A DNA stretch of 63,920 bases, the filler included, from Neoconidiobolus thromboides FSU 785 (Eukaryota; Fungi; Entomophthoromycota): the NCBI GenBank assembly GCA_025603075.1. It is 10 parts of 10 records of this genome, joined end to end, with 100 filler letters (N's around TTAATTAATTAA, not from the genome) between each part and the next. Parts side by side here need not be neighbours in the genome. Positions count along the whole stretch, not along the records: positions 25,563 to 44,980 come from MU626558.1; 9 more parts are not named here. One strand, given 5' to 3'. The number at the start of each line of letters is the position of its first letter. Positions within the stretch are counted from its first letter, which is position 1. The notes beneath the pieces were generated by a model, which saw only the letters and a program-made list of their open reading frames with translations, was not told the DNA's origin and made no database searches. A program made the position numbers and the translations under genes. Below, piece after piece: positions 25,463 to 44,980 of this stretch.

Positions 25463-25679
25463 NNNNNNNNNNNNNNNNNNNNNNNNNNNNNNNNNNNNNN
25501 NNNNNNTTAATTAATTAANNNNNNNNNNNNNNNNNNNNNNNNNNNNNNNNNNNNNNNNNNNNATATTATATATCTGTTAAATATCTAACAGAACTAACAT
25601 AAAATACATAGTTAGGAAAATTAGCTATTTAAGAAAAGGAAACAATTAAAATAAGTTTTAAATAGAGACATTTAATTTT

Positions 25680-25780
25680 AGGCTTTTTAGATTTAACCGT
25701 TATATTGGACACAAACTTAAAATTTAAAATTTGGATTAATTTCTAAGTAGATTCTGAAACCAATTAGGACAGCCCCATAT
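25680..25780 (+). mobile_element. Family B element terminus
   Basis: 101 bp, 2 mismatches from the reverse complement of 59207-59307; ends GGACAGCCCC-ATAT like family A. Confidence 0.85.
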
Positions 25781-25869
25781 GGGGATGTATTTTTATGTTT
25801 AAGAATTTTACTAAATTTTCCGCTTAAAAAATCGAAAAAACAATGAAGCCAAAAAAAACACTCCCATAT
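25777..25869 (+). mobile_element. MITE family A copy abutting family B
   Basis: ATAT-GGGGATGT...CACTCCC-ATAT; the left ATAT is shared with the family B end. Confidence 0.85.
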
Positions 25870-26033
25870 TTAATCTTTATTTATCTGTGATCTGAATATT
25901 ACTTTTTATTATGAATAAAAAATTAAACAGCAATTTATTATAGCTTTTATAAATCGAATAAATACCAATTTTATAATTGATCCAATTATTAACTGTTAAG
26001 AAACAATTGATCTTTGATTGTAGCTAAAAGTAT

Positions 26034-26136
26034 ATATGAGGATGTATTTTTGTGTTTAAAGATTTTATTAACAATTTTTTCGCTCAGATATCGCTTAGAA
26101 GATGGGAAAAATAATGAAGCCGAAACACTCCCATAT
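26034..26136 (+). mobile_element. MITE family A copy
   Basis: ATAT-GAGGATGT...CACTCCC-ATAT. Confidence 0.85.
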
Positions 26137-26696
26137 CTTTTTTAGAAATATATTTTATTACATCAACTAAAAGTAGCTATTAAAATATTAACAATTTTAT
26201 TCTGATAGTTTGAGTTTTTGTTAAGTTTATTTCAAAATTAATTAAACAATGAAAACTTAGACAGTTTTTCGGATAAAAACAAAATATTGAAAATAGATCA
26301 ATATTGTATATATGTATGTTTTATTTTTTACTTAAGCTATAAATTATATTTTATTTAAATCTATTTTACTTCTTTAATAGTGTTGTTATAAGTTTCTTGA
26401 AAGCTATAAATGGTTGTTATCAGCACGTTCGGATTCTAAATTCTTGAATCCTTCTCTACTTTAACAATAAGGAATATTAAATGGAGAAGGTAAAATATCT
26501 ACAATTTAAATTGTACCTATACAGAATTACTTTGTTTCTAATTTCATTTAATCTAACTTTGGAGTATTTTCTAGTGAATTACGAATACTCCTAGGAAGGG
26601 AAAAGGTAACCATTATACTTAATAATATAAAAGAAAGCGAATAGTTGGTTTCTATATCTTTATCATTTATTTCGTACTCAAAATTTTCAATTTTAG

Positions 26697-27663
26697 CTAT
26701 TTTGAGATTTGGAAGTAGTGATAAAAAATAACAGATTTTTCAACTGTCCTACAAATAGTATTGATCTTTAGCTGTTTAACATATTTACAATTATACGCTA
26801 TAAATCCATTTATATAGATATGAAGCTTATTCACTCTTATAACATCCAAACAAGCACTTTGAATTTTGGTCAACTCATAAATGGCCTTCAATAACATTAT
26901 TGTTAATTTCCTTATATACTTCTTTCAATGTTGGTATCTTAGTAAAATCACTATTAATTGACTTGGTTCTATTAAAATAGCACAAAATAGTAACATTACA
27001 ATTCTTAATTAATATTAAATTATTAAAATCTTTATCTAAAAAACTGTCTTCCAAATTAATAAATTTTACAGTTTTGAACTTTGTCAAATCATCGAAGCAG
27101 TTAATATCAAAAATTGTAATAAAATAATTCTCAATGATTAATTCTAAATTAGCACCAGTTTGTCTTTGAATCAAATTCATTAGGTGTAAGGATAGTTGAG
27201 CGAGACCTTAAACGTAACAACCATAACTTAATAAATTTAAATTTAATAATATTCAAGCCATCAAGACAAAAGCCGTTTTATCCATCTATCTTTGATATTC
27301 TCAAGCTATCTGGGCTTAGATGATTAATAACATCAGTAATATTTATACCATGTATACAAATATCTGGTATTTCAGTTTGAGCTAGATAGTTACCGAATTT
27401 GACTATTTAGTAAGGAATGTTGCTTAAGAATATCTCTAATGCTCTTGACTCGGGTAGTTTAGCTTTAATAATAATATTACTATCATCTTGATTGCTACAT
27501 CACCAATATGCTTTATGTAATTGATATAGATTATATTTGAACAAGAGTTCAATAGTTTAATATCCTGAGTACACAGATATAAATATTTCATTGAAGGCCC
27601 ATTTTGTCCTAAAAAGTTCACATGGCATTTTCCACAATTGATAGAAGTGTAATGTGAGCGCAT
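26697..27663 (-). pseudogene. Degenerate ORF relic, possibly LRR/RNI-like
   Basis: Three protein-like segments in different frames (27663-27436, 27180-26875, 26897-26697) with no clear splice joins. The family is a guess from the L/I/N periodicity. Confidence 0.3.
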
Positions 27664-29160
27664 AAAATTATATCTTACAACTCTATTTACAACCTTAAAT
27701 AGCTATTTATTAAGAAGGGATAATTTACCTAACCCTTCTAGATGCAATAATTCAAATATTACTTCCATAAAATAATAGTTAAGTACTCAAGCTAGGTTGG
27801 TGTTATGAAAAATAACTAAACTGAAACAATAATATTATTTATTTATATACTTTTTAATTTAGCAAAATTGATAACTATCCTTGATGACGTAATATGCCTT
27901 TTTACCTGTGTAAAATAAAAAATTCAACAGTCATTTTTTCTAAAGTTTCTTAGATTGACTAAAAAAATTTCATCATAACTACAATTTTTTCTTATATTCA
28001 TAAAAGGTTGAAATTCTCTAATCTTTTACAAGTTAATGTTGAAAATTTCAAGGCTACAAAGGAGAAGTAAGATGAGCAACTTGGATAATAGCTACTAAAC
28101 GATTGAATTAAAATGGAGAGTTCTTGGTTATTATCCAATAAAAGTCAAGGATATTGCATTAAAAAATAGCTCTTGTGCCATAACTAATTGAATTGTCAAT
28201 CTAATATCCACTGTTTATTATTAAAAGTTAAGCAGAGCTGGTTATATATAGGTATTTCGATTTGTTTTGATTTAGTATTAATTTTCTTAATATGAATAGA
28301 AGATTTTAACTTTAACCATGGTTGAATTTATTCAAGTGAAATTAATAGTAGATCAAAAAAACTAAAATTAGCTGAAATGCAGCCAGCTCTAGATGATATA
28401 TGTTAGACTCTATGAAAATAGTCACTACAACTTTCGATTCGTTATACTTAATTTGAAATTAATCCTATACTATAAGTATATTTTTTGTGCTTGTTAATAA
28501 TGATGATATAAGTTGTTATTGTAATTATTATTTTATCAATTATCCATTATTCTTTATACTACTATATTAATAAGTATTCCAATTAGTATAAATATGTTTG
28601 TGAACTATTTTTAAACAAACAACTTTGAATGAATAAATTTTTGATGATAGCTTTTATATATTTTCAAAGGATAAACCTAATTTAAATACCTTCAATATTT
28701 CACCATCCTTATCAGCTTTAGAATGTCTAAAAGTGCCCAACTCTTATTTAATTGGTGATATTTTATATTGTGAATCCGATTGATTTGCTCTAAAATATTG
28801 GATCAGAAGTCTATGTGTTCAATTTGGAGTAGCTTGCCAAAATATAATACTTTAAAAGAAACAGATCTAAATCCTTTAGTATCACTTTTCCTGTTCTAAA
28901 TTCAGGATATCCACAGGCTACTTATACTTAAAAAACCGAAGATATCCTCTGGAAATTAGATAATCCTAATAGTTCAAGATATTGTATTTTAGATTAGAGC
29001 CCTTTGTCAATAAAATGAAGTGAGAAGATTAAAGCACGATATTAAAATTGTTAGATTTCAATCTAAATTTTGAGGACTTCAAATTAGCCAATAAAATTGA
29101 AAACTAAAAAATAAACAAAAAAATACCAGTTTCAATTTTTTCAAATAAATTAGACTGAAA

Positions 29161-31016
29161 ATGAATCGTATTAGACCCTTGTTATATCCTACTAAAAGAT
29201 ATTTAACAACTAAAAAATTAATCACTACTCCGATTTATTATGTTAATTCAAGTAAATTTTCATCTATTCAAATACTCCTCATTGATTCATTAACCCTTTT
29301 TCTTAGAACCTCATATTGGTCATTTATATACTAATGTGATATCGGATGTCTATAGTCGTTATTTTGAACTAACTGGAGATAAAGTATTACAAAGTACTGG
29401 ATGTGATGAACATGGACTAAAAATATATCAAGCCTCAACAAAACAGTCAATCACCCCACAATTATTTTGCGATAAAATAGCATATAATTTTTTAAAATTA
29501 AAAGAAAAAAGTGAAATGAAAGAAGATACAATTTTTATAAGAACGAGTGAAGAAAGACATAAAAAAATTATTCGAGAAGTTTGGCTGGAATTGGAACGAA
29601 AGGGGTACATTTATAAGGATTTTTATGAAGGATGGTATGCAATCTCAGATGAAGCTTTTGTTAAAGAAGAAGAAGTAGAAAAGAAAGGGGATAAATATTA
29701 TGTAAAGAGCAGTCAATCTGAAGTGGTTTGGATGAATGAACCAACGTATAAATTCAAGTTGTCCATGTTTAAGGAACAAATTCAGCAATTTATTTTAGAG
29801 AATGAAAATGGTAAATAACATTTGTAGATAGAAATCAATACTAATGATTTTAATTTAAATTTAAATTTAGCTATTTTACCATTAACTCGACGTAATGAAG
29901 TATTGAGTTTAATTGAAGATGGTATTAATGATTTATCTATATCAAGACCAACTGAAAGGGTTAAATGGGGTATTCAAGTGCCTAATGATAATACTCAAAC
30001 TATTTATGTTTGGCTAGATGCTTTATTCAATTATTTAACAGTAACTGAATATCCAGATGTTAATTATAGACAATATTTTGATAATAGGATTCATATTGTT
30101 GGTAAGATTTAATTTAATTTAACATTTATTATGTTATATATATATTAACATTGTTATAATTAGGTAAAGATATATTAAAGTTTCATACTATTTATTGGTA
30201 TGGATTTTGTTTAGCTTTAGGCTTAAGCTTACCTAAAGTAGTATTAGCCCATGGTCATTGGACTAATTTAGGGATGAAAATGAGTAAATCAAAAGGTAAT
30301 AGCGTTGATCCAATACCATTAATTGAACAATTCGGTTCCGATCCTATTCGCTATTTTTTATTACGTAATGGAGGTGATTTTAATATGGATTCAGGTAATT
30401 TTATATTAGTATATTATATAGTATATATTATATTTATGAACTATTTTTTATTTTAGATTTCAATGAAAATACTTTAAAAGTAAAATATAAAAAAGAACTA
30501 GTTAGTTTATTAGGTAATTTAATATTAAGAATTACAAGTCCTTCTATCAATCCAGAACAAAATATTCAAATTATTACAGATACTAAAGAATTTAATATGG
30601 AAGAACATCAATTGATTTTGCAATTTAATAATATAATAAGCCAAAGTAATCAATATATGCTTCAATATCAGCCAAATAAAAGTATTGAATTAATAATTAA
30701 TGGATTAATATTAGCCAATCAATATATACAAAAAAAAGAGCCATGGAAATTAAATAATATAACAGATTTTGATAAAAAACAAAAAATTCTTTATTTATTA
30801 TTTGAAATTATTAAAATTACGACTATTTTATTATTACCTATCATGCCTATTAAATGTAATCAGATATTGACTATATTAAATATTGATGAGAGTAAACGTA
30901 ATTTAAGTAATATCGAATTTATGAAGGGCTGGAATATTACTAATAATAATAAGATTCACTTGATTAATAAGGAGAAATTAATTGAATATTCTCCATTATT
31001 TCCAAAATTAAATTAA
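29161..31016 (+). CDS. MSM1: Mitochondrial methionyl-tRNA synthetase, multi-exon
   Basis: Basic presequence, then ITTPIYYVNS/KPHIGHLY (HIGH motif across intron 29252-29306), GCDEHG, DLSISRP..WGI, TIYVWLDAL, GKDILKFH, KMSKSKGN and an anticodon-binding C terminus. Confidence 0.95.
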
Positions 31017-31062
31017 ATTAAATTAAATAATAATAATATTATTATTAACATTATTATTTAAT

Positions 31063-32229
31063 TTAGTCAATTCGATTAGATACCCATTCATAATAATCGT
31101 AATAAATTTGATTGAAATAATTTCTTTTATCAATTGATTTCTTATTTAATTGTTGAATTTCATCTAATGTCATATTAACTTTTTCTCTTGATTTACTATA
31201 TAAAGATATAAATTGATAAGCTAATATCTTTTTTTCTTTTGATTTAGATTCGAATTCTAATTATAAATAATTAATATTTCATTGATAAGAGAATTATATT
31301 TTTACTTTTTAATTCTAATTCTGGATCATCTTGTTCAATTATTTGTTTCATTTCTTCCATTACTTTATTTGCTTCTCTTAACAATAAAGTATTTCGATTT
31401 TCTTCAGGCTCATCTGGAGATATAAAACTAAATTCTATAAATAATAATAATAATAATAATAAAATAGTTAATAAAATAATTAATAATCAATAATCGATAA
31501 TTAAATTACCATATTTGTCCTTTAATCTTTTATTTAAACAAGTCATATCTTCATTTTCATCATCATCTTCAGTTTTATCAAAACTTTTATTTCTTTGATA
31601 TTGATAATTTAATTGATTCTCTAATTTTCTTTTCTTTTTGTTAAGATTTTTATTCTTGTTCTTATGGGTTTTTATTTGTTCATTTTCAATCCATTTAGTT
31701 TTTTCTTCTTCTTTTTCTTTTATTTCCTCCGTTATATTCTGTCCCTTATCATCCTTTATTTGATTTTTGCTATTATTATTACTTCTTAAATTAATTAACT
31801 GAGATAATGGAGTTGAATTCAATAATCTGTTATTATTAAATAATTCACTAAATTGACTATCTGTTTTAGAATAATTGAATTTATTATTAATATTATTAAT
31901 ATTATTAATGTTTTCTCCATTTAATGATATTTCATCAATAATTTCTTTTTCCTTTTGTTTTTCTTGATGGTATTTATTTTTACTTTTATTTTCTTTACTT
32001 TGATTAAATGAATTGCTGCTTTTTGAGTTTGATTGAAATTCAATCGATGAGGTTAAATTATTACTATTAAACATTGAACTCATTTGATTTTTAATTCCTT
32101 TATTTTGTTGTTTATTATTATTAAATTGGTTTTTATTATCATTTAATAAACTTAATAATGTATCATAACTATCACTTTTATTATTAAACATTGAACTCAT
32201 TTGATTTTTGATTTCTTCATTTTGTTTAA

Positions 32230-32268
<39 letters not shown>

Positions 32269-33106
32269 ATCTATTTTTATTACCATTTAATAAACTTAAT
32301 AATGTATCATAACTATTACTGTTTCTATTATTGCCTTTGTCAATTAATTCAGATAAGGGAGTTGAATTAACTAATCGATTAGTGTTAAAAATATTGCTAA
32401 ATTGAGTTTCACTTCTTGAATTACTTAGTTCATTTTTAATATCAAAATTTTTATTTGTTTTATTATTTAATGAAATATCTTCAATTATGTCTTTATCTTT
32501 ATCTTGAAATAAATTCATTTGATTATTTTTGTTATTAAACATACTATTATAAAAATTAGAACTAAATATTGAAGTTATTGAATTTTCTTCTTGTATTTCA
32601 TTTTGTTGATTATTTAAATCATCATTTAACAATTCGTTATTTGTTCGTTTTCTTTGATTGAATAATTGATTTTGGAACTTACTACTAAATATCGATGGTG
32701 GTAAAATACTTGGATTATATTCTTGATTTTGTTGTTGATTCTTTATTGGATTTTGATTTTGTTTGTTATTTAATAAATTTAATAATGTATCATTATTATT
32801 ACTAGTTATAGATTGTAATCGGTTCAGTTTATTTTTATTATTTATAGTATTAATGTTAATGTTATGTTTTTTATGATACAACTCATCCAACTTATTAGTA
32901 TCAATAAGCATCGTTTTCCTGTTATTATTATTATTATTATTAAATAAATTGTTGTTTTTCTTAATATTATTTCCTATATTTACATTCAACTCGTTACTAA
33001 CATTGTTTTTTTTACTGTGATATAGTTGATCTAATTTATTAGTATCAATTAGTATTTCATTGTTATCTTTAATTTTATTATAACTAAATAACTTTTGTTG
33101 ATTTAA

Positions 33107-33156
<50 letters not shown>

Positions 33157-34846
33157 ATATACTATATTTATTATAATCAATTGACTGGAACTGAACTTTA
33201 TTGTTAATAATGTTCTCTTTATTCTTATCATAATTGTCATTAAATAATAATCCATTATTACTTAAACTATTTTTATATTTTAAATCAAAATCAATTTGAT
33301 CTTTCTCATTATTATTATTATTGCTGAATAAACTCCCCAATTTATAATTCTCACTCTCAAATATAAATTGATTTTCCGACAATGTACTACTTGTATTTGA
33401 AACTAATTTATTCCTTTTGTTATCTTTCTCAATACTTCCTCCTGCCTCTTCAATAACTTTCCATTCTGGATATTGTAAATCAAAAGTAGTATCCATTTTA
33501 TTGTTATTATTGTCATTATTAATAGTGTTATTCCTACTATTAAAATTAAAATGAACTCTTTTGTTTCTTCTACTGTTACTCTGTATATCAGCACTACTTC
33601 CAATAGTTTGATTTTTACTTAAATTATCCTCATTTTTATAATGAAATATTGAATCTTCCATTATTTCTTCTTTGGTCAAATTGACTTTTTTTATTGGAAA
33701 ATAACTTAAATTCGTACTTAAGCTGTCTTTATTGATTTCATTCAATGTCACTTGTTTTCTACCATTTTCCGTGATAGGATTGATACTTCTCATCAGTAAA
33801 GAGCTACTACTTGATTGTATTGATTTCTCCATATTATATTGATTTAAAGTATTATTATCATTAGTATTTCTATTGTTATTATTAAATATATTTTTCTCCA
33901 AATTAAAATCAATATCACTAAATTGACTTTCAAACGAAGAGATTCTACCATGTTCATTATTTTTAATACTATTACTAAAGATGGATATACTTTCACGCGA
34001 TCTATCAATAATTTCATTGTTTCTATCCATTTGTTTCATATCTTCCTCACTGCCAATTTTGACATTCTTTACTAAAAAACTATTAAGAGTTGAGAGTTGG
34101 TTCTTACTATTAATATCTTCATCTTTAACAGAATTTAAATCAATTAATGGAAATGAACCATTGGTTGATGAAGCTAATTGATTCTTATTAAATGGATTAA
34201 AACTATTATTATTATTATTATTAAAAATACTATCCGTTTTATTAAAATCCACCTCATTGTATCTATCTTGAATCCCCACTTCTCCAAACTCAACACTATT
34301 CCCACTACCTTCACGAAACATTGATAAGCTTTTTCTAAAGCAATTACTTTTTGAATCCGATATATCCCCCTTTTTAAAACTTAGTATTTCTTGTTCAATG
34401 GCTTGTTCTCTTAATAAATCTAGTTGATTTGGTGGAATTGAGTTAATATTTTGAGGCCCACTGTTAATTACTTCTCTTTGGATGTTTTCTTGAGTGGGAT
34501 TAAAATCTATCAATGGAAAAGAAGCGCTACTCAAAGCTTGAGATTGATATTGAAGCTGGGAATTGGAACTAAAAATGGACTGGTGATCGTTATTGTTATT
34601 TAAATTATCATTGTTGATAAATATATTTTCGATTGAACTAGTTTTATATTGAGAACTCAATTGAGATTGCGGAATATTATCTTGTTGATTTAAATCCTCA
34701 TTGTTATTCAACCTTTGATTATTATTATTTATATTATCCATACTCTTCTTACCTTCAACTTCGCTTTCTTCCTCATTAATTAATTTTTTATACCTTTGAT
34801 ATAATTCTTGGTATTTACTGCTAGTATCTTTTGTTCCAATTTCCAT
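31063..34846 (-). CDS. Large Asn/Ser-rich, largely disordered protein of unknown function (~1200 aa, 3 exons)
   Basis: The 1119-aa ORF continues through two GT-AG introns into exons EFSFISPDEPEE...ELELK and KFESKSKEKK...YEWVSNRID*. Confidence 0.8.
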
Positions 34847-36123
34847 TAAGATCTAATAAGGTTAAATCTAACCTAAGTTGAAGTGTTTATAAGGTTGAAA
34901 TGAAGATTTTTTTTAATCATTTTAATTTTAGATTAGTTTCATTCTTATAAATTTTTATTAGCTAAAAAATTTACTTGATCAAAAAAACTAAAGATATTTT
35001 GATGTTATTAATCGTAATTAAAAAGAATAGAAATCATTTTGTAAATTTTTATTCCTTTTGATACTATGTCATTTTTGAGTAATAGGGAGGTAATAGACAG
35101 ACAGAAGCTGATCAGCCCATTTCTATTAGTTGAAAATTAACCCTCATTGCAATCTTCCTTAACCCCAATACTAGCCTGAAACTAATCTCTCTAACCTTAA
35201 CATTAAGCCTAACACTGACCTTTACCATGTATGAGTTATCTTTCTAAGCTTGAAAAGCTTACTTTTTTGATTGTCACTTTTTTAACTATAATAGGAGAGT
35301 ATGCAAAAATTAGTAAATAAAATTCTTGAGCATTTAGTAAAAGTCAAAAAGGATATGCTATTAAATGAAAATTAAGTTTAAAGATTAAAAACTCTAAAAA
35401 ATAACTGTTCCTTTTTTAATTTTATTTCATAGTGCCAATCCAATTTAATTATTTAACAGTTATTCTTTTGGAAACAAAAATTAAATTACTAAATCTGGAT
35501 GAATTATTTGATTTATGCTTTTTAAACAAATATTTATAGAGTTATAAATGAAATCCTAAATTGTTAAAATTCATGAATTTCAATTTGTTAATAAAATCTA
35601 TACTTGTGGTTGATTATCTCTATAGTATTTTTTTTAACATCTAAATGAAAATGATATACTTTAAAAGTGCCAACTCATTATAACTTTAATATAGTGGGCC
35701 AAATGGAGGATTTAACATGTTATAAATGAGTCATTAAAATCTAATCGTTGAAGTTTTGCTAAACCAATTAAAAAAAGCAATAAGTTTTTATGTGTGTAAA
35801 AACTTGATCAAAATTAAATAAAACTTATAAAAGCATTAAGTATAAATTGCTATCAAACGATTACAGTTTAATCTGATTACCAATTTGCAAAAAAGACAAT
35901 AATGCTATACCTAATTAGTTAATCAAAAATTATAAAATATTAACTTTAAAAAATATTCCCACACCTTTAATGTTTATAAACTTAGATATCAAAATTTCAT
36001 ATCCAATGGGTCATTACGGTAAACTAAAAGATTGTTTTAATAATAATAGACAAATCAATGCGCTGTTCATCGGAAACACTGATTTGTATCCCCGATAAAT
36101 TATAGTGATACCAAGCCGACGCT

Positions 36124-37095
36124 TTAATATCTATAGCCATTATTTCTAGAGCTATGTCTCACTGGTGATCTTGATCTGTATCTTCCCGATTCTACTTCAT
36201 TAGAACGATATCTATCTCGCATTCTTGGTGATCTAGAACGATCATCTCTTCTTTTTCTTGATTCATAATCATCATATCGGTCATACCTACTAGATCTTGG
36301 AGCATCTCCATAGTATCGCTCTCTGGCTGAAGTCAGGTCATCTTCATAGTGACGACTAAAATAATTAATTTATTTACCAAAACAAAAAAACTAATTACCT
36401 TTTACTTCTACCTTCATGACTTTCATCTTCACTATCTTTTGAGTGTTTTTTGCTTTTGCTTTTCTTTTTTTCCTTTTTTTCTTTTTTTTTTTCCTTTAAA
36501 TGAGCTAATTTGATAGGATTTTTTAATAATTTTTCTAAACTTTGTTTTTCCATTTTTTTAATCATAAACAAAGGATCATCTCTTATTTTATTTTGAGTAT
36601 CTCTAATTGAATTAGCATTGGTTAAATCCAATGCTTTACCACTACTTAAACCTTCTCCACCTTCAATTAATTTATCTCCGCCTAATAACTTATCGATCTT
36701 TTTATCTCCCAATAAATAACTTTCTTTTTCTTCTTGTTCCATCACTTGATGAATAGGTCCAGAAGCATACATCCATTCCAATTTATTGGAGCGTTTTCTA
36801 AATTAAAGCATTAGTACTTTATTAAATTTTAACTTAAAATAAGTTCCTACTTCAGTCCAGCCTGCTCTTGTAACTGCTCCATTTCTTCAATCTTTCTTTG
36901 CTCTTCAATCTCTTTTTTTATTTGCTCAATACGTTTTCCTTCATCTTCTGCTTTTTTTTCTTCAAGCCATACTTTCTCCATATTATGCATCCGTTGCGGA
37001 TGCCATGATTTTTTGAAATTCTATTATAAAAGTTACTTAGTTTATGACTTGAACTTTTTTTTTTAAATTGTACTTACCAGATCGCCTCCTCCCAT
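36124..37095 (-). CDS. CWC25: Pre-mRNA splicing factor CWC25, 4 exons
   Basis: Spliced N terminus MGGGDLNFKKSWHP...EKVWLEE, then LEWMY and RDDPLFMIKK, and an RS/RD-rich tail. Confidence 0.93.
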
Positions 37096-37773
37096 TGTTA
37101 TTTTAGTTTATTTTTTTAAAAGAGTAAAGATGAATTTTAGGATGCTTTCTTTTTTACACTGTTTAGGTTGAATGCAAAATTTCATGAATCAATAGTAATT
37201 GGTAGAAAAATATCCACCCAACTGCTTATTTGAAGCTAAGTTTACATTTTATGCAATTTATCTAAGTTTAAGAATGAAGTTTTAGCTGAGATTTTTTAAC
37301 AAATTTTTAAGCCTGCCCAAAATTTAAAATTTAAAATTTATAACTTGTTCACTTTTGATACTTAAAATTATAAAGATATTTAAACTAACTTTACAATAAA
37401 AAAATAAGCTATTAAACTAAACTAAACTAAAATAAATATTTTTATAATTATTGATAAAATATCTTAAATATGCTATAAATTATATTTAATTAATTAAAGG
37501 TGTTATTTATTATAGTTTATTTTATAAATAAATAAATATCAAATCATTATTTTTCAAGTTTAGATTATAATAATAGATAAATACTTAAAATTTATTATAA
37601 AAAAAGTAATTATTATAAATATAATTAATAATAACAATTAGAGTTATGAGTTTTTGTCTTATTGATACTTAAAATTTAGAAAAAATAATATAATGTTATA
37701 AAATTTTTAAATCTTATTCAAACTTTTAAACTTAAATTTTATATTTTTTTATAAAGTTAGCAAAACTTTATAT

Positions 37774-37880
37774 ATATAAGGGATATACTTTTATGTTTAA
37801 GAACTTTACTAATAATTCTTCCAATCAAATAGCGCTTAAAAAATGGAAAAGTAATGAAACCAAAAAATACACCCCCATAT
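37774..37880 (+). mobile_element. MITE family A copy
   Basis: Consensus core; ends CACCCCC-ATAT. Confidence 0.85.
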
Positions 37881-38015
37881 CTTTATTAAAAATAATAGAT
37901 CTAATAATAAATATTTGCTATAGTTTACTAATAGATTTTTTCATAAGCTGTATAGCTTTTGGAATTTTATTATTACAGGCATTTTTTATCAATCATTAAA
38001 CTCCATTATGCTTTC

Positions 38016-38402
38016 GTGAAACATCACTTTGTTAGTTCTATGATTGATTATAACATAATAATCACTTAAAGTGCTGTGTTCTCGAGTTTGGAGACAATCA
38101 ATCCCAAACTCCTATTTTGATTTAGTATGAGATTTTTTGTCACGCGATTCTGAAGGGCACTATTTTCCCATTTTAATATCCATACTTGTTGATGTATAAA
38201 ATATTTTAGAATGTAATAACTCAAGGCTTTTTAACTGAGTTATTCCCTGGAATCTCATACATTTAATGAAGCCACTAAATTTTTCTGATAGTATTTTACA
38301 TAGATTTTACAGTAGTATCATCTATTCTACTTATCTTACATAGTCTGTAGTCCATTATGTGCTATTCTTCATAATTCAAGTCTATCTTAGTTACATGAAT
38401 TA
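38016..38402. repeat. Dispersed repeat family C, copy 1 (relic ORF on the minus strand)
   Basis: Aligns colinearly with 44593-44980; conserved blocks include AGTAGTATCATCTATTCTACTTATCTTACATAGT. Confidence 0.85.
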
Positions 38403-38961
38403 AAACCTTTTGACTTACAGCTAATCAACTGAGTAGTAACTGCTTTTAATTCCAACTAGTGAGTACCAGATTTCATACTTTTTATTTCAATTTAACAATA
38501 TTAATATCAACTGAAATATACTTATTTAAGTATCAATTTGTTTTTTTGAACTAAAAATTGGTTGATTCGTGACTAAACTATAAGTACTTCAAAAGTAATC
38601 TCCCTTTTAAACTAAAAGTATATATACAAAAGTTAGTATCTATAATGACTAATTTATACTATTATTTTAGTAGATTTGTTCAAAGAATATGATTACTTTT
38701 AAAACAAACTTAGGAACTGTTATTTAAAAATATACATTTTTCAAGTTATTTAGAAGAAAATCAAAAATGATTAAACTCATAGTTTAAAATAAAATAATTC
38801 AATTTCTATTAAGAATAAAAATAACAAAGTATCTATTAAAAAAAAATTTATAATAATAAAAGTAAATCAGGATAAAGACAATGAAATTATGATATTGAAT
38901 AATAATTCTCCCAGAAATATTCAATTCCATTTCCCTCCTTTTCCTCCTCTTCATTTCATTT

Positions 38962-41272
38962 CTAATGATTAATCAATTTCCAATGAATTTCATTTTGTCC
39001 TGCTTTTAAACAATCTTTTACCATAAAATCAATTGCATTACAAATACTTAATAATTTTTCTAGTTTCCCACTCTTAGATCTCCTTAATTCCACTTTATCT
39101 TTATCCAGTTGAATTTTTGTTTTAAATTCCATTGAATATCTAGTAATAAATCCAGACAAAAAAGATAACTCTCGATCTAAATCAATAACAAAAGGTGGAT
39201 TAGGACCATGAAAACCAGAACTATGTAAAGGTGCAGAATATTCTTGTTGAACTGCTAATATTTCTGTTTCAGGTTCAGACTAAAATAATAGTATTGAAAT
39301 TAGTAACATTAAGATGGAAATTTATTCTTATTAAAAATAGGTTACCGCTATATAATCAATAAAATCCATCAAATTGTTCATATTATCCATAATAAACCCA
39401 TTCATTTGGGCCATATATGGCTCTTTAACACCAAAATCAGCTAAATTAGCTAAACATTGTAAAGATTTAGCTAATAAAGTTAATGTTCGATGAGTTTTTG
39501 GATCAGGATGATCTAAATGAAGATTATTTTAGTTTCAAAAAAAAGCGAAAAGTAATTTAATGGGAGGGTAAAATTTACCTTTGACTAATCCAAATAATTT
39601 AGGTGATAATACAGCAGGACAAAATAATCTTAAAAATAAGAAACCACTATATAAAAAGAATTTTATATTAATTATTAAGTATTATTATTATTTGTTTACC
39701 TAACACAAGTATATCTTGTCATTAATAACAATTCAGGTTGATTTTGATATTTTTGACCAATTCTTAATCTCAAATTAAAAAAGAATAATCTCAATTCCCT
39801 ATAAACTTAAATTAAACTTTTATTATCTCCAAATTAATTATTTACCTAGGACATAAATGTTTTGATAATTGAATTGAATTCCATAATCTCTCGCAATATG
39901 AAAATAAAATCTTCCATTGGTTTTTAACATCCTCAGGTCGTTCTAATTTATTACTATCTACTTCACAAACAATTTTATTATTACAAACTTCCCGAATAAT
40001 ACCACCAATAGTATCTTCTAAATATTGTAATCCAACCATTTTCATATAAGCATCAATTGTCTTTGTTAAGATAGAATTCCCTCGAAATAATATATTAGCA
40101 TCTTCAGTGTTATCGACTTCTTTATAAGCTAAATAATTTAATAATTCAATTGCTTTATTTTTACATGAGTATATCTTTAAAAAGGTTTCACTCAACCAAT
40201 CTAAATGTTGATTATTTAAAATTAAATCATAAATTAAATCTGATTTATAATCTAATATCAATTCTAATAAATTATAATATTCTCCACTTTTTAATATATA
40301 AACTTCATCATAACGTAATTTTAATCTTAAATCCCCATGATAGTTAAAAGATATTGGTAGATTTAATTGATTATTACTATTATTGTTCATTTGATTATTA
40401 TTATTATTATTATTGCTATTACTATTATTACTATTATTACTATTATAAGTATTAATATTATTATTATTATTACTTATATTATTATTATTATTATTATTAT
40501 CTTTGGATGAAAATAATGTTTTTTTCTTATTACTTGGTTTATCTTTTAACTTGTTATTGTTATTAGGATTAGAATCTCCCTCCATTAAGGGATACCAACC
40601 TTCATAAAATTCACCAGGACGAATAGATTTAACTGGAATAAAAGAATGAGCTAAACCAACATTTTTTGAATATTTATGATGAGATATCAAATTAATTGTG
40701 ATCCCATCTTTAAATCCTTGTAGATCTTCCATATGAAAATCTTCTCTCCAAAATGGATTATATGTTTTACTTTTAATACTAGTAAATCCAGTTAATTTGT
40801 CATCAAAATAAATTTGACAATAAATAGATTCATTTGTTCTTAAATTTTTGCCATCTAAAATACGCAACCAAAAAGAACGATATACTCGATATAATTTAGG
40901 TAATGGTAATAATTTACCAAAGATTTCAGGTTGAGCAAAAGATTTTAGTAAACAAATCCAGATATCTCGTTCCATAAAAGTTTCTACTTTAAAATAATAA
41001 GCTTCATCATCTGTAATATAAATTGAGAATGTGCTCTTTTCATTAAAATAAGAATCATCTAATTTATTAATATTAAACCGATTCATTTCTTTAATATCAA
41101 TTTTTAATAACAAATTTTTATCATTTTCAGTATACAATGATAAATACCCATATGAACTTAAATGTAATAGTATATTTTTCCAATTACCATATGTTGATGG
41201 ATGATTAAATGTTAAATCTTTATTTTTATTATGTTTATATTCTATAATAAAAATAATAAAATTATTAATATA

Positions 41273-41316
<44 letters not shown>

Positions 41317-43491
41317 TACCTCTTAAATAAGCTTTGCCAACTTTAATGATTTGTTCTTCAATATTAAGTTTTATTAATGATGATCTAGTAGAACTTAAAT
41401 CATCATAGGAATCTAATAAATTCAAATTGATTTTATTCATATCATTACTACTATTATTGTGATGATGAGTAACTATTGTATTATTGTTATTTTCATATTT
41501 ATTATAATTTATTGAATTATTCATATTATTTTCATTTGTTTTTTCATTTTCATTTTCATTTTGTTTTGCTATTAATAACTAAAATAAAATATTTATTAAT
41601 ATTTATTTTATTTATATTATTATTTAATATTTACTTTATAATTTTCTTCAGGTATGTATTTTTTAAAACAATTCATCCATTTTTGTTTATTTATTATAGT
41701 TTCATATTGTAAATATAATTCAAAATTACTAAATAAAATATTATTAATTATTGTAAAACATATATTATATATCATATAAAATTTACTTATTATCATCAAT
41801 CATTGATAATTTTAATATATGATTTTTAGTAGGATGATTATAATCTTCAATAATTGTATTAAATAAATGAATTGGTTCCTATAAATTAGATAAGTAATAA
41901 TAATAATAATAGTAATTAATAAGTTTACTTTCAACGTTTCATTATCTTGATGATCATATAAAATTAATTGAGATTTATGATTAATTTCAAAAAAACCTAA
42001 CTTTGAAGATGAATTATTTAAAAAATAAATTAAATAGCCAAAACATATTTGTTCTTCCTCATTATTTACATCTTTCATTGAATTATTATCATTATGTATT
42101 AATCCTAATTCTTTTTTATATGTTTTAAACTCCGTCTAATTTGAAAAATTAAAAAAATATTAAAATATTATTATTATTATATTAATCTTTCTTACCGAAA
42201 ATAATTCTTCTCCAATTTTATGATGAGTAGGTGGTATATCTAAATTAATAACTTCAGGAAACTAGAAATAATAAATAACAAATTAAAAATATTATAATAA
42301 TAATTAACAATAATAATTAAGATTACTGAATTTAAATTTTCTGCCATATTAGATAAAGTAGGTTCAGTTGATCTTAAAGTAGATAAACAATCGGAATGCC
42401 AACGAGTAAATCGTTCCATAAAACCAATTAATTTAAAATACCACCATAATTCACTATTACTTTTTAATTGATTTAGATAATCAATCCAATTTAAATAGCT
42501 TTGTACTTTATATAATTTTAAATTATATAATTCATGACTTTCCTATTAATTAAAATATAAATTAAATTAAATTAAATAAATGTTATATTACAGTATGATT
42601 TTACTATAATAATAATAATAATAATAATGATAATAATAATAATAATAATAATAATAAACTTACTTCAACTAATTGAATAGCTAAACTCGGTTCCATATAA
42701 CATTTTTTTAAACCAATAAAGGAACTTTTTTTTTGTAATAATTCATTACTTTGTTGTTGGTATTTTTGCATTTTGACCTAATTTAAAAAAAAAGTATTAG
42801 TTTTATATTACATATTAAATTATTATTATTATATTAATAAAATATTTATGTTTGTTTTATTATTATAATTGATAATTTCAACTTACTTCTAAATCCTCTT
42901 GAATTCTTGATTTCATGTTTAATACTGGTACTAAGAAATAATATTATAGTCAATATTGATTTATTAATAAACTTAATTTTATTCTATTTACTTATGACTT
43001 CTTGATCCATAACATTAAGTAAAGAAATATGAGTATTAAATATTAATTCAATTGATTTACTCATTTTATCTAATTTAATAAATAAATAAATAAATAAATA
43101 TTATTAGTAAATGGAAATATTATTAATAATATGATAATATAAAGGTACCTACCAATTAATTGTTCATCAAATGAATCTTTATAAATACCTTCTCTTAACC
43201 CTCGAAATTTTTGCGTCATCAAATTAGTACGTTGTTGAAAAACTAGAAAATAAAATAAATATATTAATAAGCTGGACTCAAAATAAACATAGATAATAAA
43301 ATATGATAAAACATAATCAATTAACATAATTACTGTTTCTTACCTTTCATACTTTCAATAATCCCTCGATACGCTTTAACCCAAGTACTAATCTCTTGCC
43401 AATCTTTTAATATTGAAGATTGTACTTCAATTACAGATTGTCGAAATACTGGATGATCATTATATGCTTGTTTAATGTTTAAAGTGACCAT
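38962..43491 (-). CDS. Ras GTPase-activating protein with BAR-PH-PH-C2-RasGAP architecture (Bud2-like C-terminal half), multi-exon
   Basis: RasGAP motifs LFRGNSILTK, SGFLFLRLFCPA, RTLTLLAKSLQ and IDLDRELS. C2 motif PFWREDF. Two PH-like segments each end in a Trp-containing helix. N terminus MVTLNIKQAYNDHPVFRQSV resembles the ACAP/centaurin-beta BAR start. Confidence 0.85.
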
Positions 43492-44592
43492 TTAATGTTA
43501 ATAGTAACTATAGTTATAATAAAGAAGCTGGAATGTTTTTTATAAATATATACTATAATTATATTTTTATGTAAATAAGATACAAATAAATAAGATAAAG
43601 AAAGAATAAATTTAATTTTATAAACTTTGTTTAATTTGTTTTTATTATTAATCTTACTTTGGAGTTAATACTCCCCCTGAATCTTGCATTTCTCATTGAT
43701 TTTTGAAATTAAAAGAATTCAAGTTATTTTTTAAGGGCTGGATTTACCATCTCCTTTTTTTGGCCTTTTTTTAATGTGTTGGTTTTTAAAAGTGACTTTA
43801 TTTTTATACATTTTAACGTAATAAATTTTGATTTAAAAGCCAATACACACCTAATTAGTTTTATTTTTTTATTATAATAGTAATAAATTAAAGAATTAAA
43901 AAATAAAGTAGAAGAATTGTTTTATTTTATTTAGTATTAAGATTTAATGAATTTCAATAATAACTATCGAAAAGTGAACAAACATTAAAATAAAGGGGTT
44001 ATTTTGATTTCAAGTGATATAGGAGAGCTTAATTTTTAGAATTTTACGAATCGAATTTTACTAAGTTTGAAAATAATTAAAGTCATGAAACAAATAAAAT
44101 TTACATAAAATTTTGTTATAAAATGTGAGTTTCATAAGAACGGATTTATGCAAAATGTTGTAAAAAAATCATAAATTATATTATTTTAATATAATATAAT
44201 ATATATCATTATTACATTTACTAAAGAAATAATTAAATCATTTACCAGATATCATAAATTAAAGACACTACCAGATTCAAAACTACAGTCATTATAAAAA
44301 CAGATAGTTTTATAATGACTGTTAATAATTTATAATTTTGGCTGCTTTAATCAAATAATATTTATTTAAAAGCTAGAAATTTTTATAAAAACGATTAGTT
44401 ATATAAATTAAAAATATATTAACTATACTACAAATATAAAACTGACTGAAAATAAAGCTTTAAAATAGTTTTTATATATTATCAATATTAGCACCGAATT
44501 ATAATATAATTATATATATATATTATTAGATACCTTTAAAAAAATGTAAATAATCATTATTTAAAAATTCAAAAAGTTTTTTATTAATAAAT

Positions 44593-44980
44593 GTGGAATA
44601 TCGCTTTGTTAGTGCCATGATTGATTATAACATAACAATCACTTAAGTTGTTGTGTTTTCGAGTTCAGAAACAATCAATCTCAAGCTTTTTATTTCTATT
44701 TGCTATAACAATTTCTAACGTATATCTCAAAGAATATTATCCTCTCGTTTTGATATCTATACTTGATCAAGTATAAAAGAGATTCTTCAACATAATAACT
44801 CGAGACTTTTTAATTGAGTTATCCTTTGATATTATACCTTTAATAAAGTCATTAAATCTTTCTATTAGTATTTTACATAAATTTTATAGTAGTATCATCT
44901 ATTCTACTTATCTTACATAGTCCATAGTCTATTATGTGCTATTCTTCATAAATTCAACTCTATCTTAATTACATAAACTA
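44593..44980. repeat. Dispersed repeat family C, copy 2 (runs to contig end)
   Basis: Colinear, diverged match to 38016-38402. Confidence 0.85.

What the first reader, a model, noticed from the sequence alone, without database searches (positions are those of the whole stretch)
38962..43491. RasGAP fused to an N-terminal ACAP/APPL-type BAR-PH module (BAR-PH-PH-C2-RasGAP)
Seen in sequence: I joined a dozen-plus small exons, most absent from the ORF track, by GT-AG splicing. The N terminus reads MVTLNIKQAYNDHPVFRQSVIEVQ (compare ACAP1 MTVKLDFEECLKDSPRFRASIELVE, from memory). Later blocks LLNVMDQEVIIPVL, WIDYLNQLK and LIGFMERF fit BAR helices 2-3. Two PH domains, a C2 domain and a complete RasGAP domain follow. 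Established knowledge: this BAR-PH module is normally paired with ArfGAP, RhoGAP or PTB domains, and Bud2- or p120-type RasGAPs lack it. Inference: a curvature-sensing Ras/Rsr1 switch-off enzyme linking membrane shape to polarity signalling. I do not recall this architecture being described, but could not search.
Basis: partly seen in the sequence, partly recalled or inferred. Interest (0 to 1): 0.7.

Follow-up and report, generated by a model that had tools for sequence, protein, structure and literature searches.

The report
BAR-PH-fused Bud2-like RasGAP gene
The window holds a real 16-exon gene of the insect-associated fungus Neoconidiobolus thromboides. Its protein joins an APPL/ACAP-type BAR-PH membrane module to a PH-C2-RasGAP "off switch" for Ras-like GTPases, a combination already sitting unnamed in databases for many early-diverging fungi but, as far as I could find, never described or studied.

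Summary
On the minus strand, 43491..38962, 16 exons joined by 15 GT-AG introns (47-121 nt) give an 1151-aa protein. It is identical, residue for residue, to GenBank KAI9291347.1, a "hypothetical protein" of Neoconidiobolus thromboides FSU 785.

- **Pfam:** BAR_3 above its curated cut-off (residues 4-231), two PH domains, C2 and RasGAP.
- **N-terminus:** a profile of it and seven relatives matches solved APPL1 BAR-PH over its full length (E 5e-29) and ACAP1 over the BAR part (E 8e-25). A model of it finds only APPL/ACAP BAR-PH structures at the top.
- **C-terminal half:** it models confidently (pLDDT 85.5) as a p120RasGAP/SynGAP-like C2-GAP unit. The arginine finger (R856) and the FLR arginine (R974) are intact.

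The architecture is not unique. It recurs in Massospora, Conidiobolus, Basidiobolus, Dimargaris, Mortierella, Radiomyces, Jimgerdemannia and the non-fungal Fonticula. Dikarya Bud2 proteins and Coemansia keep only the PH part. Chytrids and Capsaspora carry an F-BAR in the same place.

Four literature searches found no description of it. It is best filed as an uncharacterised, conserved variant of the Bud2/p120-type RasGAP. Membrane or curvature sensing and the GTPase target remain inference.

The parts
38962..43491 (-). Whole coding region: 16 exons, 15 GT-AG introns, 1151 aa, ATG at 43491, TAG at 38964-38962
   Evidence: Model built. It is identical to P0001/KAI9291347.1, and the public record has a gene of the same span.
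42259..43482 (-). BAR domain of APPL/ACAP type, aa 4-231, spread over exons 1-7. Three long helices at 14-67, 76-145 and 151-228.
   Evidence: Pfam BAR_3 scores 40.6 bits against a cut-off of 31.7. The family profile matches APPL1 BAR-PH at E 5e-29. AF2 model and Foldseek agree.
41656..42045 (-). PH1, the PH of the BAR-PH module, aa 283-376, exons 8-10
   Evidence: The AF2 model shows a beta sandwich plus a C-terminal helix. The profile alignment to APPL1 PH runs through it. It aligns with the first PH-like region of Dikarya Bud2 proteins at hhalign probability 91%.
41321..41578 (-). Asparagine-rich linker, aa 384-469, exon 11
   Evidence: 25% Asn. No Pfam hit for this exon.
40937..41320 (-). 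PH2, aa 470-571, start of exon 12
   Evidence: Pfam PH at 470-566. The AF2 model has pLDDT mostly above 90 here.
40583..40891 (-). C2 domain, aa 587-689
   Evidence: Pfam C2 at 596-688. Foldseek matches the p120RasGAP C2-GAP structure 9bz4.
40358..40570 (-). Asparagine-rich disordered insert, aa 694-764, lying before the last long strand that packs against the C2/GAP unit
   Evidence: pLDDT below 50 at model residues 235-305. 48% Asn.
39268..40342 (-). RasGAP catalytic domain, aa 770-1050, exons 12-16. The arginine finger R856 (LFRGNS) is at 40084-40082. The FLR-motif R974 is at 39630-39628.
   Evidence: Pfam RasGAP at E 2e-33. F855/R856 are invariant and FLR is kept in at least 90% of 33 relatives. 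Foldseek matches 1wq1, 1wer and 9bz4.
38968..39180 (-). C-terminal helical extension, aa 1080-1150
   Evidence: AF2 helices at model residues 621-691, mostly confident. No Pfam family.

Best explanation
This is one expressed gene of Neoconidiobolus thromboides (Entomophthorales). It encodes a RasGAP of the Bud2/p120 kind whose PH-C2-GAP core is preceded by an APPL/ACAP-type BAR-PH module. Shown here: the gene structure, the five domains, intact catalytic arginines, and conservation of the whole architecture in many early-diverging fungi and in Fonticula. Inferred: the BAR-PH part forms the usual crescent-shaped dimer and, together with PH2 and C2, holds two GAP domains on an anionic and possibly curved membrane. 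There the arginine finger switches off a membrane-bound Ras-family GTPase. By analogy with Bud2 the target would be an Rsr1/Rap-like GTPase acting in polarity or hyphal-tip signalling. Dikarya Bud2 looks like a derivative that kept the PH of the module and lost the BAR helices.
For: - **Gene model:** the 16-exon model equals GenBank KAI9291347.1 exactly.
- **Domains:** Pfam gives BAR_3 above its gathering score, plus PH x2, C2 and RasGAP.
- **BAR-PH by sequence:** the family profile matches APPL1, APPL2 and ACAP1 BAR-PH crystal structures at E 5e-29 to 8e-25. The APPL1 match covers profile positions 3-385.
- **BAR-PH by structure:** the AF2 model shows three long helices plus a PH domain. The top 15 Foldseek hits are all APPL/ACAP BAR-PH. 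In the Atlas, the BAR_3 families with ArfGAP or RhoGAP are nearest.
- **C-terminal half:** the model has pLDDT 85.5. It matches p120RasGAP C2-GAP 9bz4 at E 1e-29 (TM 0.80-0.85) and the Ras-RasGAP complex 1wq1.
- **Catalytic residues:** R856 is invariant and FLR R974 nearly invariant in 33 relatives.
- **Same N-terminal module elsewhere:** Massospora, Conidiobolus coronatus, Basidiobolus (two genes), Dimargaris, Mortierella, Gamsiella, Radiomyces, Jimgerdemannia and Fonticula.
- **Link to Bud2:** a Neolecta BUD2/CLA2 protein is among the close hits. BUD2/CLA2 is among the nearest large Atlas clusters. PH1 aligns with the first PH-like region of Dikarya Bud2-clade proteins at probability 91%. 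Yeast Bud2p is published as PH-PH-C2-RasGAP (PMC5091641).
Against: - No reads could be laid, so one continuous transcript is supported only indirectly.
- The BAR region carries no net positive charge. It is 0 here and ranges from +2 to -14 in relatives.
- PH1 of this species lacks the basic residues seen in relatives, so lipid binding is not evident from sequence.
- In RGBARG the BAR domain did not sense curvature (PMC7416115).
- The backbone of the C2-GAP tree is unresolved (support 44). Fonticula falls next to the F-BAR group with weak support. Neither orthology with Bud2 nor ancestral presence of the BAR is shown.
- The BAR-PH model has only moderate confidence (pLDDT 71, 8 sequences).
Confidence: 0.8

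Rival explanations
1. This is a gene-prediction chimaera. A separate BAR-PH gene (exons 1-10) and a separate PH-C2-RasGAP gene (exons 11-16) were wrongly merged, both by the reader and by the public annotation.
For: No read-level evidence was obtained. Several relatives in databases are annotated without the N-terminal part, for example Dimargaris xerosporica, D. verticillata and some Basidiobolus isoforms.
Against: Introns 10 and 11 are only 56 and 78 nt, and the frame runs through all 15 junctions without a stop. There is no room for a terminator and a promoter. The same fused architecture was predicted independently in at least ten genomes from different projects, including Fonticula and Radiomyces. 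Runs X1 and X2 hold about 0.62 of the words, close to the value for all exons and well above the 0.46 expected for exons 11-16 alone. The shorter relatives are marked partial or start mid-domain.
Confidence: 0.04
2. The N-terminus is a generic coiled coil or another helical bundle that only resembles BAR, so the protein is an ordinary Bud2-like GAP with a helical extension.
For: Single exons give at best a weak BAR_3 hit (E 0.077). Identity to APPL is only about 13-15%. TM-scores for the whole BAR-PH are about 0.46-0.50.
Against: The full protein passes the Pfam BAR_3 gathering score over profile positions 1-224 of 235. The family profile hits APPL1 at E 5e-29 across both BAR and PH in the same order and spacing. 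The signature start (F-x-D-S-P-x-F-R) is shared. The top 15 fold matches are all BAR-PH crystal or cryo-EM structures.
Confidence: 0.04
3. The protein is a catalytically competent GAP, but the BAR-PH works mainly as a dimerisation and protein-binding scaffold rather than as a membrane-shape sensor. APPL BAR-PH, for comparison, binds Rab5 (my own knowledge).
For: The BAR region is neutral to acidic overall in the family. PH1 of this species lacks the usual basic residues. The RGBARG BAR domain showed no curvature preference (PMC7416115).
Against: ACAP1 BAR-PH, a close structural match, decorates and tubulates membranes (entries 4ckg and 5h3d). The protein also carries PH2 and C2, which typically bind membranes.
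Confidence: 0.3

Closest known systems
APPL1/APPL2 and ACAP1 BAR-PH modules (PDB 2q13, 5c5b, 4h8s, 4ckg)
   Same: An N-terminal BAR of three long helices followed directly by a PH domain. The start motif is the same, and the match passes the Pfam BAR_3 gathering score. Profile E-values are 5e-29 to 8e-25, and these are the best fold matches.
   Different: The downstream partner is PH-C2-RasGAP instead of PTB (APPL) or ArfGAP-ankyrin (ACAP). Sequence identity is only about 13-15%.
Fungal Bud2/CLA2 (GAP for Rsr1/Bud1). Yeast Bud2p is PH-PH-C2-RasGAP (PMC5091641).
   Same: The order PH-PH-C2-RasGAP is shared. A Neolecta BUD2/CLA2 protein is a close hit, and BUD2/CLA2 is among the nearest large Atlas clusters. 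PH1 aligns with the first PH-like region of Dikarya Bud2-clade proteins.
   Different: Dikarya Bud2-clade proteins have no counterpart of the about 280-residue BAR part. Their N-termini are Ser/Pro/Arg-rich instead. Orthology is not resolved by the tree.
p120RasGAP (RASA1) and SynGAP C2-GAP units (PDB 9bz4, 3bxj, 1wq1)
   Same: C2 packed on a RasGAP domain. The arginine finger FRGNS and the FLR motif are present. Foldseek gives E 1e-29 and TM up to 0.85 normalised to the target. Sequence hits reach E 2e-17.
   Different: There are no SH2/SH3 domains. A 70-residue Asn-rich insert follows the C2 domain, and a BAR-PH sits at the N-terminus.
Dictyostelium RGBARG (RCC1-RhoGEF-BAR-RasGAP; PMC7416115)
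   Same: It is the only experimentally studied protein I found that combines a BAR domain with an active RasGAP domain.
   Different: The order and domain set differ: RCC1 and RhoGEF are present, and there is no PH-PH-C2. I did not test whether the two BAR domains are related. The lineage also differs (Amoebozoa).
GRAF/oligophrenin (BAR-PH-RhoGAP) and ASAP/ACAP/plant AGD (BAR-PH-ArfGAP)
   Same: The design principle is the same: a BAR_3-PH module placed in front of a GTPase-activating domain.
   Different: The GAP domain belongs to a different superfamily and acts on Rho or Arf, not Ras.
F-BAR(FCH)-PH-C2-RasGAP(-SH3) proteins of chytrids and Capsaspora (for example XP_016606263.1, XP_004343558.1)
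   Same: They share the PH-C2-RasGAP core. They form a neighbouring, well-supported group in the C2-GAP tree.
   Different: The N-terminal membrane module is an F-BAR, not an APPL-type BAR. Only one PH is detected, and some carry a C-terminal SH3.

Membership tests
BAR_3 / APPL-ACAP-type BAR-PH module | Sequence match to the family model above the curated threshold, covering the whole domain | tested here: met
   PF16746 scores 40.6 bits against a cut-off of 31.7, residues 4-231 on profile positions 1-224 of 235. The hit is also on record in the precomputed annotation.
BAR_3 / APPL-ACAP-type BAR-PH module | A PH domain directly after the BAR, in the same register as in solved BAR-PH structures | tested here: met
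   The family profile aligns to APPL1 residues 6-371 over profile positions 3-385, E 5e-29. The AF2 model has its PH at 283-376. The top 15 Foldseek hits are BAR-PH entries.
BAR_3 / APPL-ACAP-type BAR-PH module | Crescent-shaped homodimer that binds or bends membranes | not testable with these tools
   Only a monomer was modelled. The net charge of the BAR region is 0. Biochemistry is needed.
RasGAP (PF00616), p120/SynGAP-like C2-GAP | RasGAP fold with a C2 domain packed on it | tested here: met
   Pfam RasGAP E 2e-33 and C2 E 1e-8. Model pLDDT is 85.5. The match to 9bz4 has E 1e-29 and TM 0.80-0.85.
RasGAP (PF00616), p120/SynGAP-like C2-GAP | Catalytic arginine finger (FRGN) and the stabilising FLR arginine | tested here: met
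   LFRGNS with R856 is invariant. FLFLRLFCPA with R974 is kept in at least 90% of 33 relatives.
RasGAP (PF00616), p120/SynGAP-like C2-GAP | GAP activity on a Ras-family GTPase | not testable with these tools
   This needs an enzyme assay.
Bud2/CLA2 family | PH-PH-C2-RasGAP domain order | tested here: met
   Pfam and models give PH1 283-376, PH2 470-571, C2 587-689 and GAP 770-1050. The yeast Bud2p layout is taken from PMC5091641.
Bud2/CLA2 family | Groups with named Bud2 proteins in a tree, to the exclusion of other RasGAP subfamilies | tested here: inconclusive
   The Zoopagomycota clade (98*) and the Dikarya clade containing Neolecta BUD2 (support 90-96) are both solid. The backbone joining them has support 44-80, and no outgroup was included.
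Bud2/CLA2 family | Acts on Rsr1/Bud1 in site selection | not testable with these tools
   No functional data exist for any BAR-bearing member.

The most novel reading that the evidence does not exclude
The APPL-type BAR-PH module is the ancestral N-terminus of the fungal Bud2 lineage. It was already present in the common ancestor of fungi and Fonticula. The puzzling first PH-like domain of yeast Bud2 is then its leftover after the BAR helices were lost in Dikarya and, independently, in Kickxellales such as Coemansia. Under this reading the polarity GAP was originally a dimeric device that reads membrane lipid or shape. Early-diverging fungi still use it that way, with an F-BAR version in chytrids and Capsaspora as a parallel solution.
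Probability: 0.4. Interest if true: 0.55.

Novelty: new variant of a known kind. Interest (0 to 1): 0.42.

Why it matters
BAR-PH modules are known as front ends for ArfGAPs, RhoGAPs and APPL adaptors. A conserved family that puts the same module in front of a RasGAP extends that design to the Ras/Rap branch. It also offers an explanation for the orphan N-terminal PH-like domain of yeast Bud2. It gives a concrete, testable link between membrane lipid or shape and Ras/Rsr1 inactivation in hyphal fungi that lack genetic models. The finding is modest. The proteins are already in public databases with automatic domain hits, and nothing about their function has been measured.

Tried and rejected
- **Read laying:** No splice junctions could be read.
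- **Exon-by-exon Pfam:** this detected PH, C2 and part of RasGAP in exon 12. For the BAR it gave only a weak BAR_3 hint from exon 1 (E 0.077), because the BAR is cut into seven small exons.
- **Joined protein:** I sent no self-joined protein to any search tool. The joined model was built only inside a local script and compared with P0001. Because P0001 is identical, all whole-protein work used P0001.
- **The search for homologous proteins with the family alignment:** it returned only two proteins, probably because Asn-rich words swamped the word index. It was not repeated.
- **Literature (papers read):** none describes BAR-PH plus RasGAP. The Phycomyces madC paper and the Ras-module evolution paper do not mention BAR.
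- **Trees:** they could not settle the position of Fonticula or the link to Dikarya Bud2.
- **Rejected readings:** a dictyostelid or anaerobic gut-fungus origin, my first guesses from 22% GC and poly-Asn, was rejected by the exact match to the N. thromboides record. The database name "Rho GTPase activation protein" is most likely a superfamily label (my inference); the domain is RasGAP.
Full report
**Where the window comes from.** The piece 25563-44980 is very AT-rich, 15-31% GC. The exact protein match described below identifies it as contig MU626558.1 (19,418 bp, assembly GCA_025603075.1) of Neoconidiobolus thromboides FSU 785, order Entomophthorales.

**Checking the observation.** I read the minus strand from 43700 to 38800 and translated all frames. 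Coding-looking blocks are separated by short AT-rich stretches, and each stretch begins with GT and ends with AG.

- Joining the blocks gives 16 exons and 15 introns of 47-121 nt.
- All phases are consistent and there is no internal stop. The CDS is 3456 nt, or 1151 aa, from the ATG at 43491 to the TAG at 38962.
- A TAA stop lies directly upstream of the ATG and in frame with it.

Exon by exon, Pfam sees PH, C2 and the start of RasGAP in the large exon 12. It sees the FLR part of RasGAP in exon 14. For the BAR it gives only a faint BAR_3 hit from exon 1, E 0.077. That is expected, because the putative BAR is cut into seven small exons.

**A legitimate reference for the whole protein.** I searched exon 12 alone against the 1.84-billion-protein representative library. 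The best hit, P0001, has 1151 aa, with exon 12 matching its residues 471-934.

- A local comparison showed P0001 to be identical to my model at every residue.
- P0001 is GenBank KAI9291347.1, "hypothetical protein K502DRAFT_321331".
- The public record has a gene of exactly the same 4530-nt span. Precomputed Pfam hits to BAR_3, PH, C2 and RasGAP are on record for its product.

I did not send my own joined sequence to any search tool. All whole-protein analyses used P0001.

**Transcript evidence.** I sent nothing from those places to any search tool afterwards.

Indirect evidence remains. Five runs, whose type is only guessed as RNA, hold 0.46-0.62 of the sampled 31-mers of 38900-43600. A fully spliced transcript would hold 0.64-0.67, exons 11-16 alone 0.46, and genomic DNA about 1.0. 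The two best runs, at 0.62 and 0.61, therefore look like intron-free copies covering both halves of the gene. This does not prove one continuous molecule.

**What the domains are.** Pfam results on P0001:

| Family | E-value | Region |
|---|---|---|
| BAR_3 (PF16746) | 2.9e-10 (40.6 bits, cut-off 31.7) | residues 4-231, profile positions 1-224 of 235 |
| PH | 2.3e-10 | two stretches |
| C2 | 1.3e-8 | 596-688 |
| RasGAP | 2.3e-33 | two stretches, best 907-1013 |

*The N-terminus.* I aligned the N-termini of eight family members (A2).
- The profile of that alignment hits solved APPL1 BAR-PH structures (5c5b, 2q13, 2z0o, 2elb) at E about 5e-29. The match covers profile positions 3-385 against chain residues 6-371.
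- It also hits APPL2 at E 6e-28 and ACAP1 at E 7.6e-25, the latter best over the BAR part.
- An AlphaFold model of residues 1-385 has mean pLDDT 71. It shows three long helices (14-67, 76-145, 151-228), a short fourth helix, and a PH domain at 283-376.
- Its 15 best Foldseek matches in the PDB are all APPL1, APPL2 or ACAP1 BAR-PH entries, E 3e-13 to 9e-10.
- In the ESM Atlas the nearest large clusters are BAR_3 families joined to ArfGAP or RhoGAP, none to RasGAP.

*The C-terminal half.* Residues 460-1151, modelled with 33 relatives, give mean pLDDT 85.5 and pTM 0.84.
- The model shows PH2, C2, a disordered Asn-rich insert (aa 694-764) and a helical GAP domain.
- It best matches the C2-GAP crystal structure of p120RasGAP (9bz4, E 1e-29, TM 0.80-0.85 normalised to the target). 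SynGAP C2-GAP and the Ras-RasGAP complex 1wq1 follow.
- The arginine finger (LFRGNS, R856) is invariant. The FLR arginine (R974) is kept in at least 90% of the 33 aligned relatives.

The enzyme therefore looks catalytically competent.

**Distribution.** I built local profile searches from the family's N-termini and ran them over the 150 best representatives and their cluster members. Pfam scans and source names were added.

- The APPL-type BAR-PH N-terminus occurs in Massospora cicadina, Conidiobolus coronatus, Basidiobolus ranarum (two genes) and B. meristosporus.
- It also occurs in Dimargaris cristalligena, Mortierella, Gamsiella, Radiomyces spectabilis, Jimgerdemannia, an unnamed assembly (GCA_025677835.1) and the non-fungal holomycotan Fonticula alba.
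- Mycoemilia and Spiromyces give weaker matches.
- Coemansia proteins begin with PH1 only.
- About 20 of the 150 representatives carry an FCH/F-BAR in front of PH-C2-RasGAP instead. These include Spizellomyces, Borealophlyctis and Capsaspora (Capsaspora also has an SH3).

**Relation to Bud2.** A Neolecta protein named BUD2/CLA2 is among the close hits. A "BUD2/CLA2 family" cluster is among the nearest large Atlas clusters, which is a lead only.

Yeast Bud2p has been described as PH-PH-C2-RasGAP (PMC5091641). A profile-profile comparison of the BAR-PH alignment with the N-termini of 15 Dikarya Bud2-clade proteins aligns only the PH (probability 91%, E 1e-6). Nothing aligns to the BAR.

Trees of the C2-GAP region give several solid groups:
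- the window's protein with Massospora and Conidiobolus (99);
- a Zoopagomycota clade (98);
- a Dikarya clade containing Neolecta BUD2 (90-96);
- the group that holds the F-BAR proteins (93-99).

The backbone between them is unresolved (44-80). Fonticula sits weakly beside the F-BAR group. The protein therefore belongs to the same wider PH-C2-RasGAP assemblage as Bud2. Strict orthology, and the direction of BAR gain or loss, are not shown.

**How it most likely works.** Shown: a single gene encodes BAR-PH, PH, C2 and an intact RasGAP. Inferred from the solved relatives: the BAR-PH dimerises, and together with PH2 and C2 it places two GAP domains on a membrane, where they inactivate a Ras-family GTPase. 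By analogy with Bud2 the target would be an Rsr1/Rap-like GTPase.

Several cautions apply.
- The BAR region has no net positive charge, either here or in relatives.
- PH1 of this species lacks the basic residues seen in relatives.
- In Dictyostelium RGBARG, the only studied BAR+RasGAP protein I found, the BAR domain gave general plasma-membrane binding rather than curvature sensing (PMC7416115).

**Novelty.** Four full-text searches and the papers read found no description of a BAR-PH RasGAP. The proteins are nevertheless public. They carry names such as "hypothetical protein", "Rho GTPase activation protein" or "Ras-GAP domain-containing protein", and for the window's protein the Pfam hits that reveal the architecture are already on record.

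I therefore rate it a new variant of a known kind: a conserved but uncharacterised architecture, of moderate interest. Its main value lies in what it may say about the origin of Bud2's N-terminus, and as a testable membrane-to-Ras link in early-diverging fungi.

Noticed in passing
P0029/P0180 (Spizellomyces), P0039 (Borealophlyctis), P0037/P0182 (Capsaspora), and about 15 further representatives: A second, apparently undescribed architecture, FCH/F-BAR-PH-C2-RasGAP, sometimes with a C-terminal SH3. It lies within a well-supported group next to the BAR_3-type proteins in the C2-GAP tree.
   Followed up: partly
window 40358-40570 (-): A 70-residue insert that is nearly half asparagine lies between the C2 core and the long strand that follows it. 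It is modelled as disordered (pLDDT below 50). A second Asn-rich linker (41321-41578) separates PH1 from PH2.
   Followed up: partly
window 31063-34846 (-); L002:10135-13918: A long Asn-rich gene. The window shows a 1119-aa ORF at 31487-34846, and the public record annotates 1219 aa. It has no Pfam family at all, and its short internal repeats include SYDTLLSLLN and IDTNKLD-LYH.
   Followed up: no
window about 36395-37100 (-); L002:7886-8586: The neighbouring gene encodes a pre-mRNA splicing factor of the CWC25/Cir_N type.
   Followed up: no
window about 29160-31020 (+); L002:13965-15820: A methionyl-tRNA synthetase gene split by introns, with Pfam tRNA-synt_1g and Anticodon_3.
   Followed up: no
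L001:1-675 and L001:1001-5490: In assembly GCA_025677835.1 the BAR-type RasGAP (P0087) lies next to a divergently oriented RasGEF gene, so a GAP and a GEF are neighbours.
   Followed up: no
P0027, P0158 and other Coemansia proteins: Kickxellales (Coemansia) orthologues start directly with PH1, while their relatives Dimargaris, Mycoemilia and Spiromyces keep BAR-like helices. This suggests a BAR loss independent of the one in Dikarya.
   Followed up: partly
I left it out of every later search.
   Followed up: no
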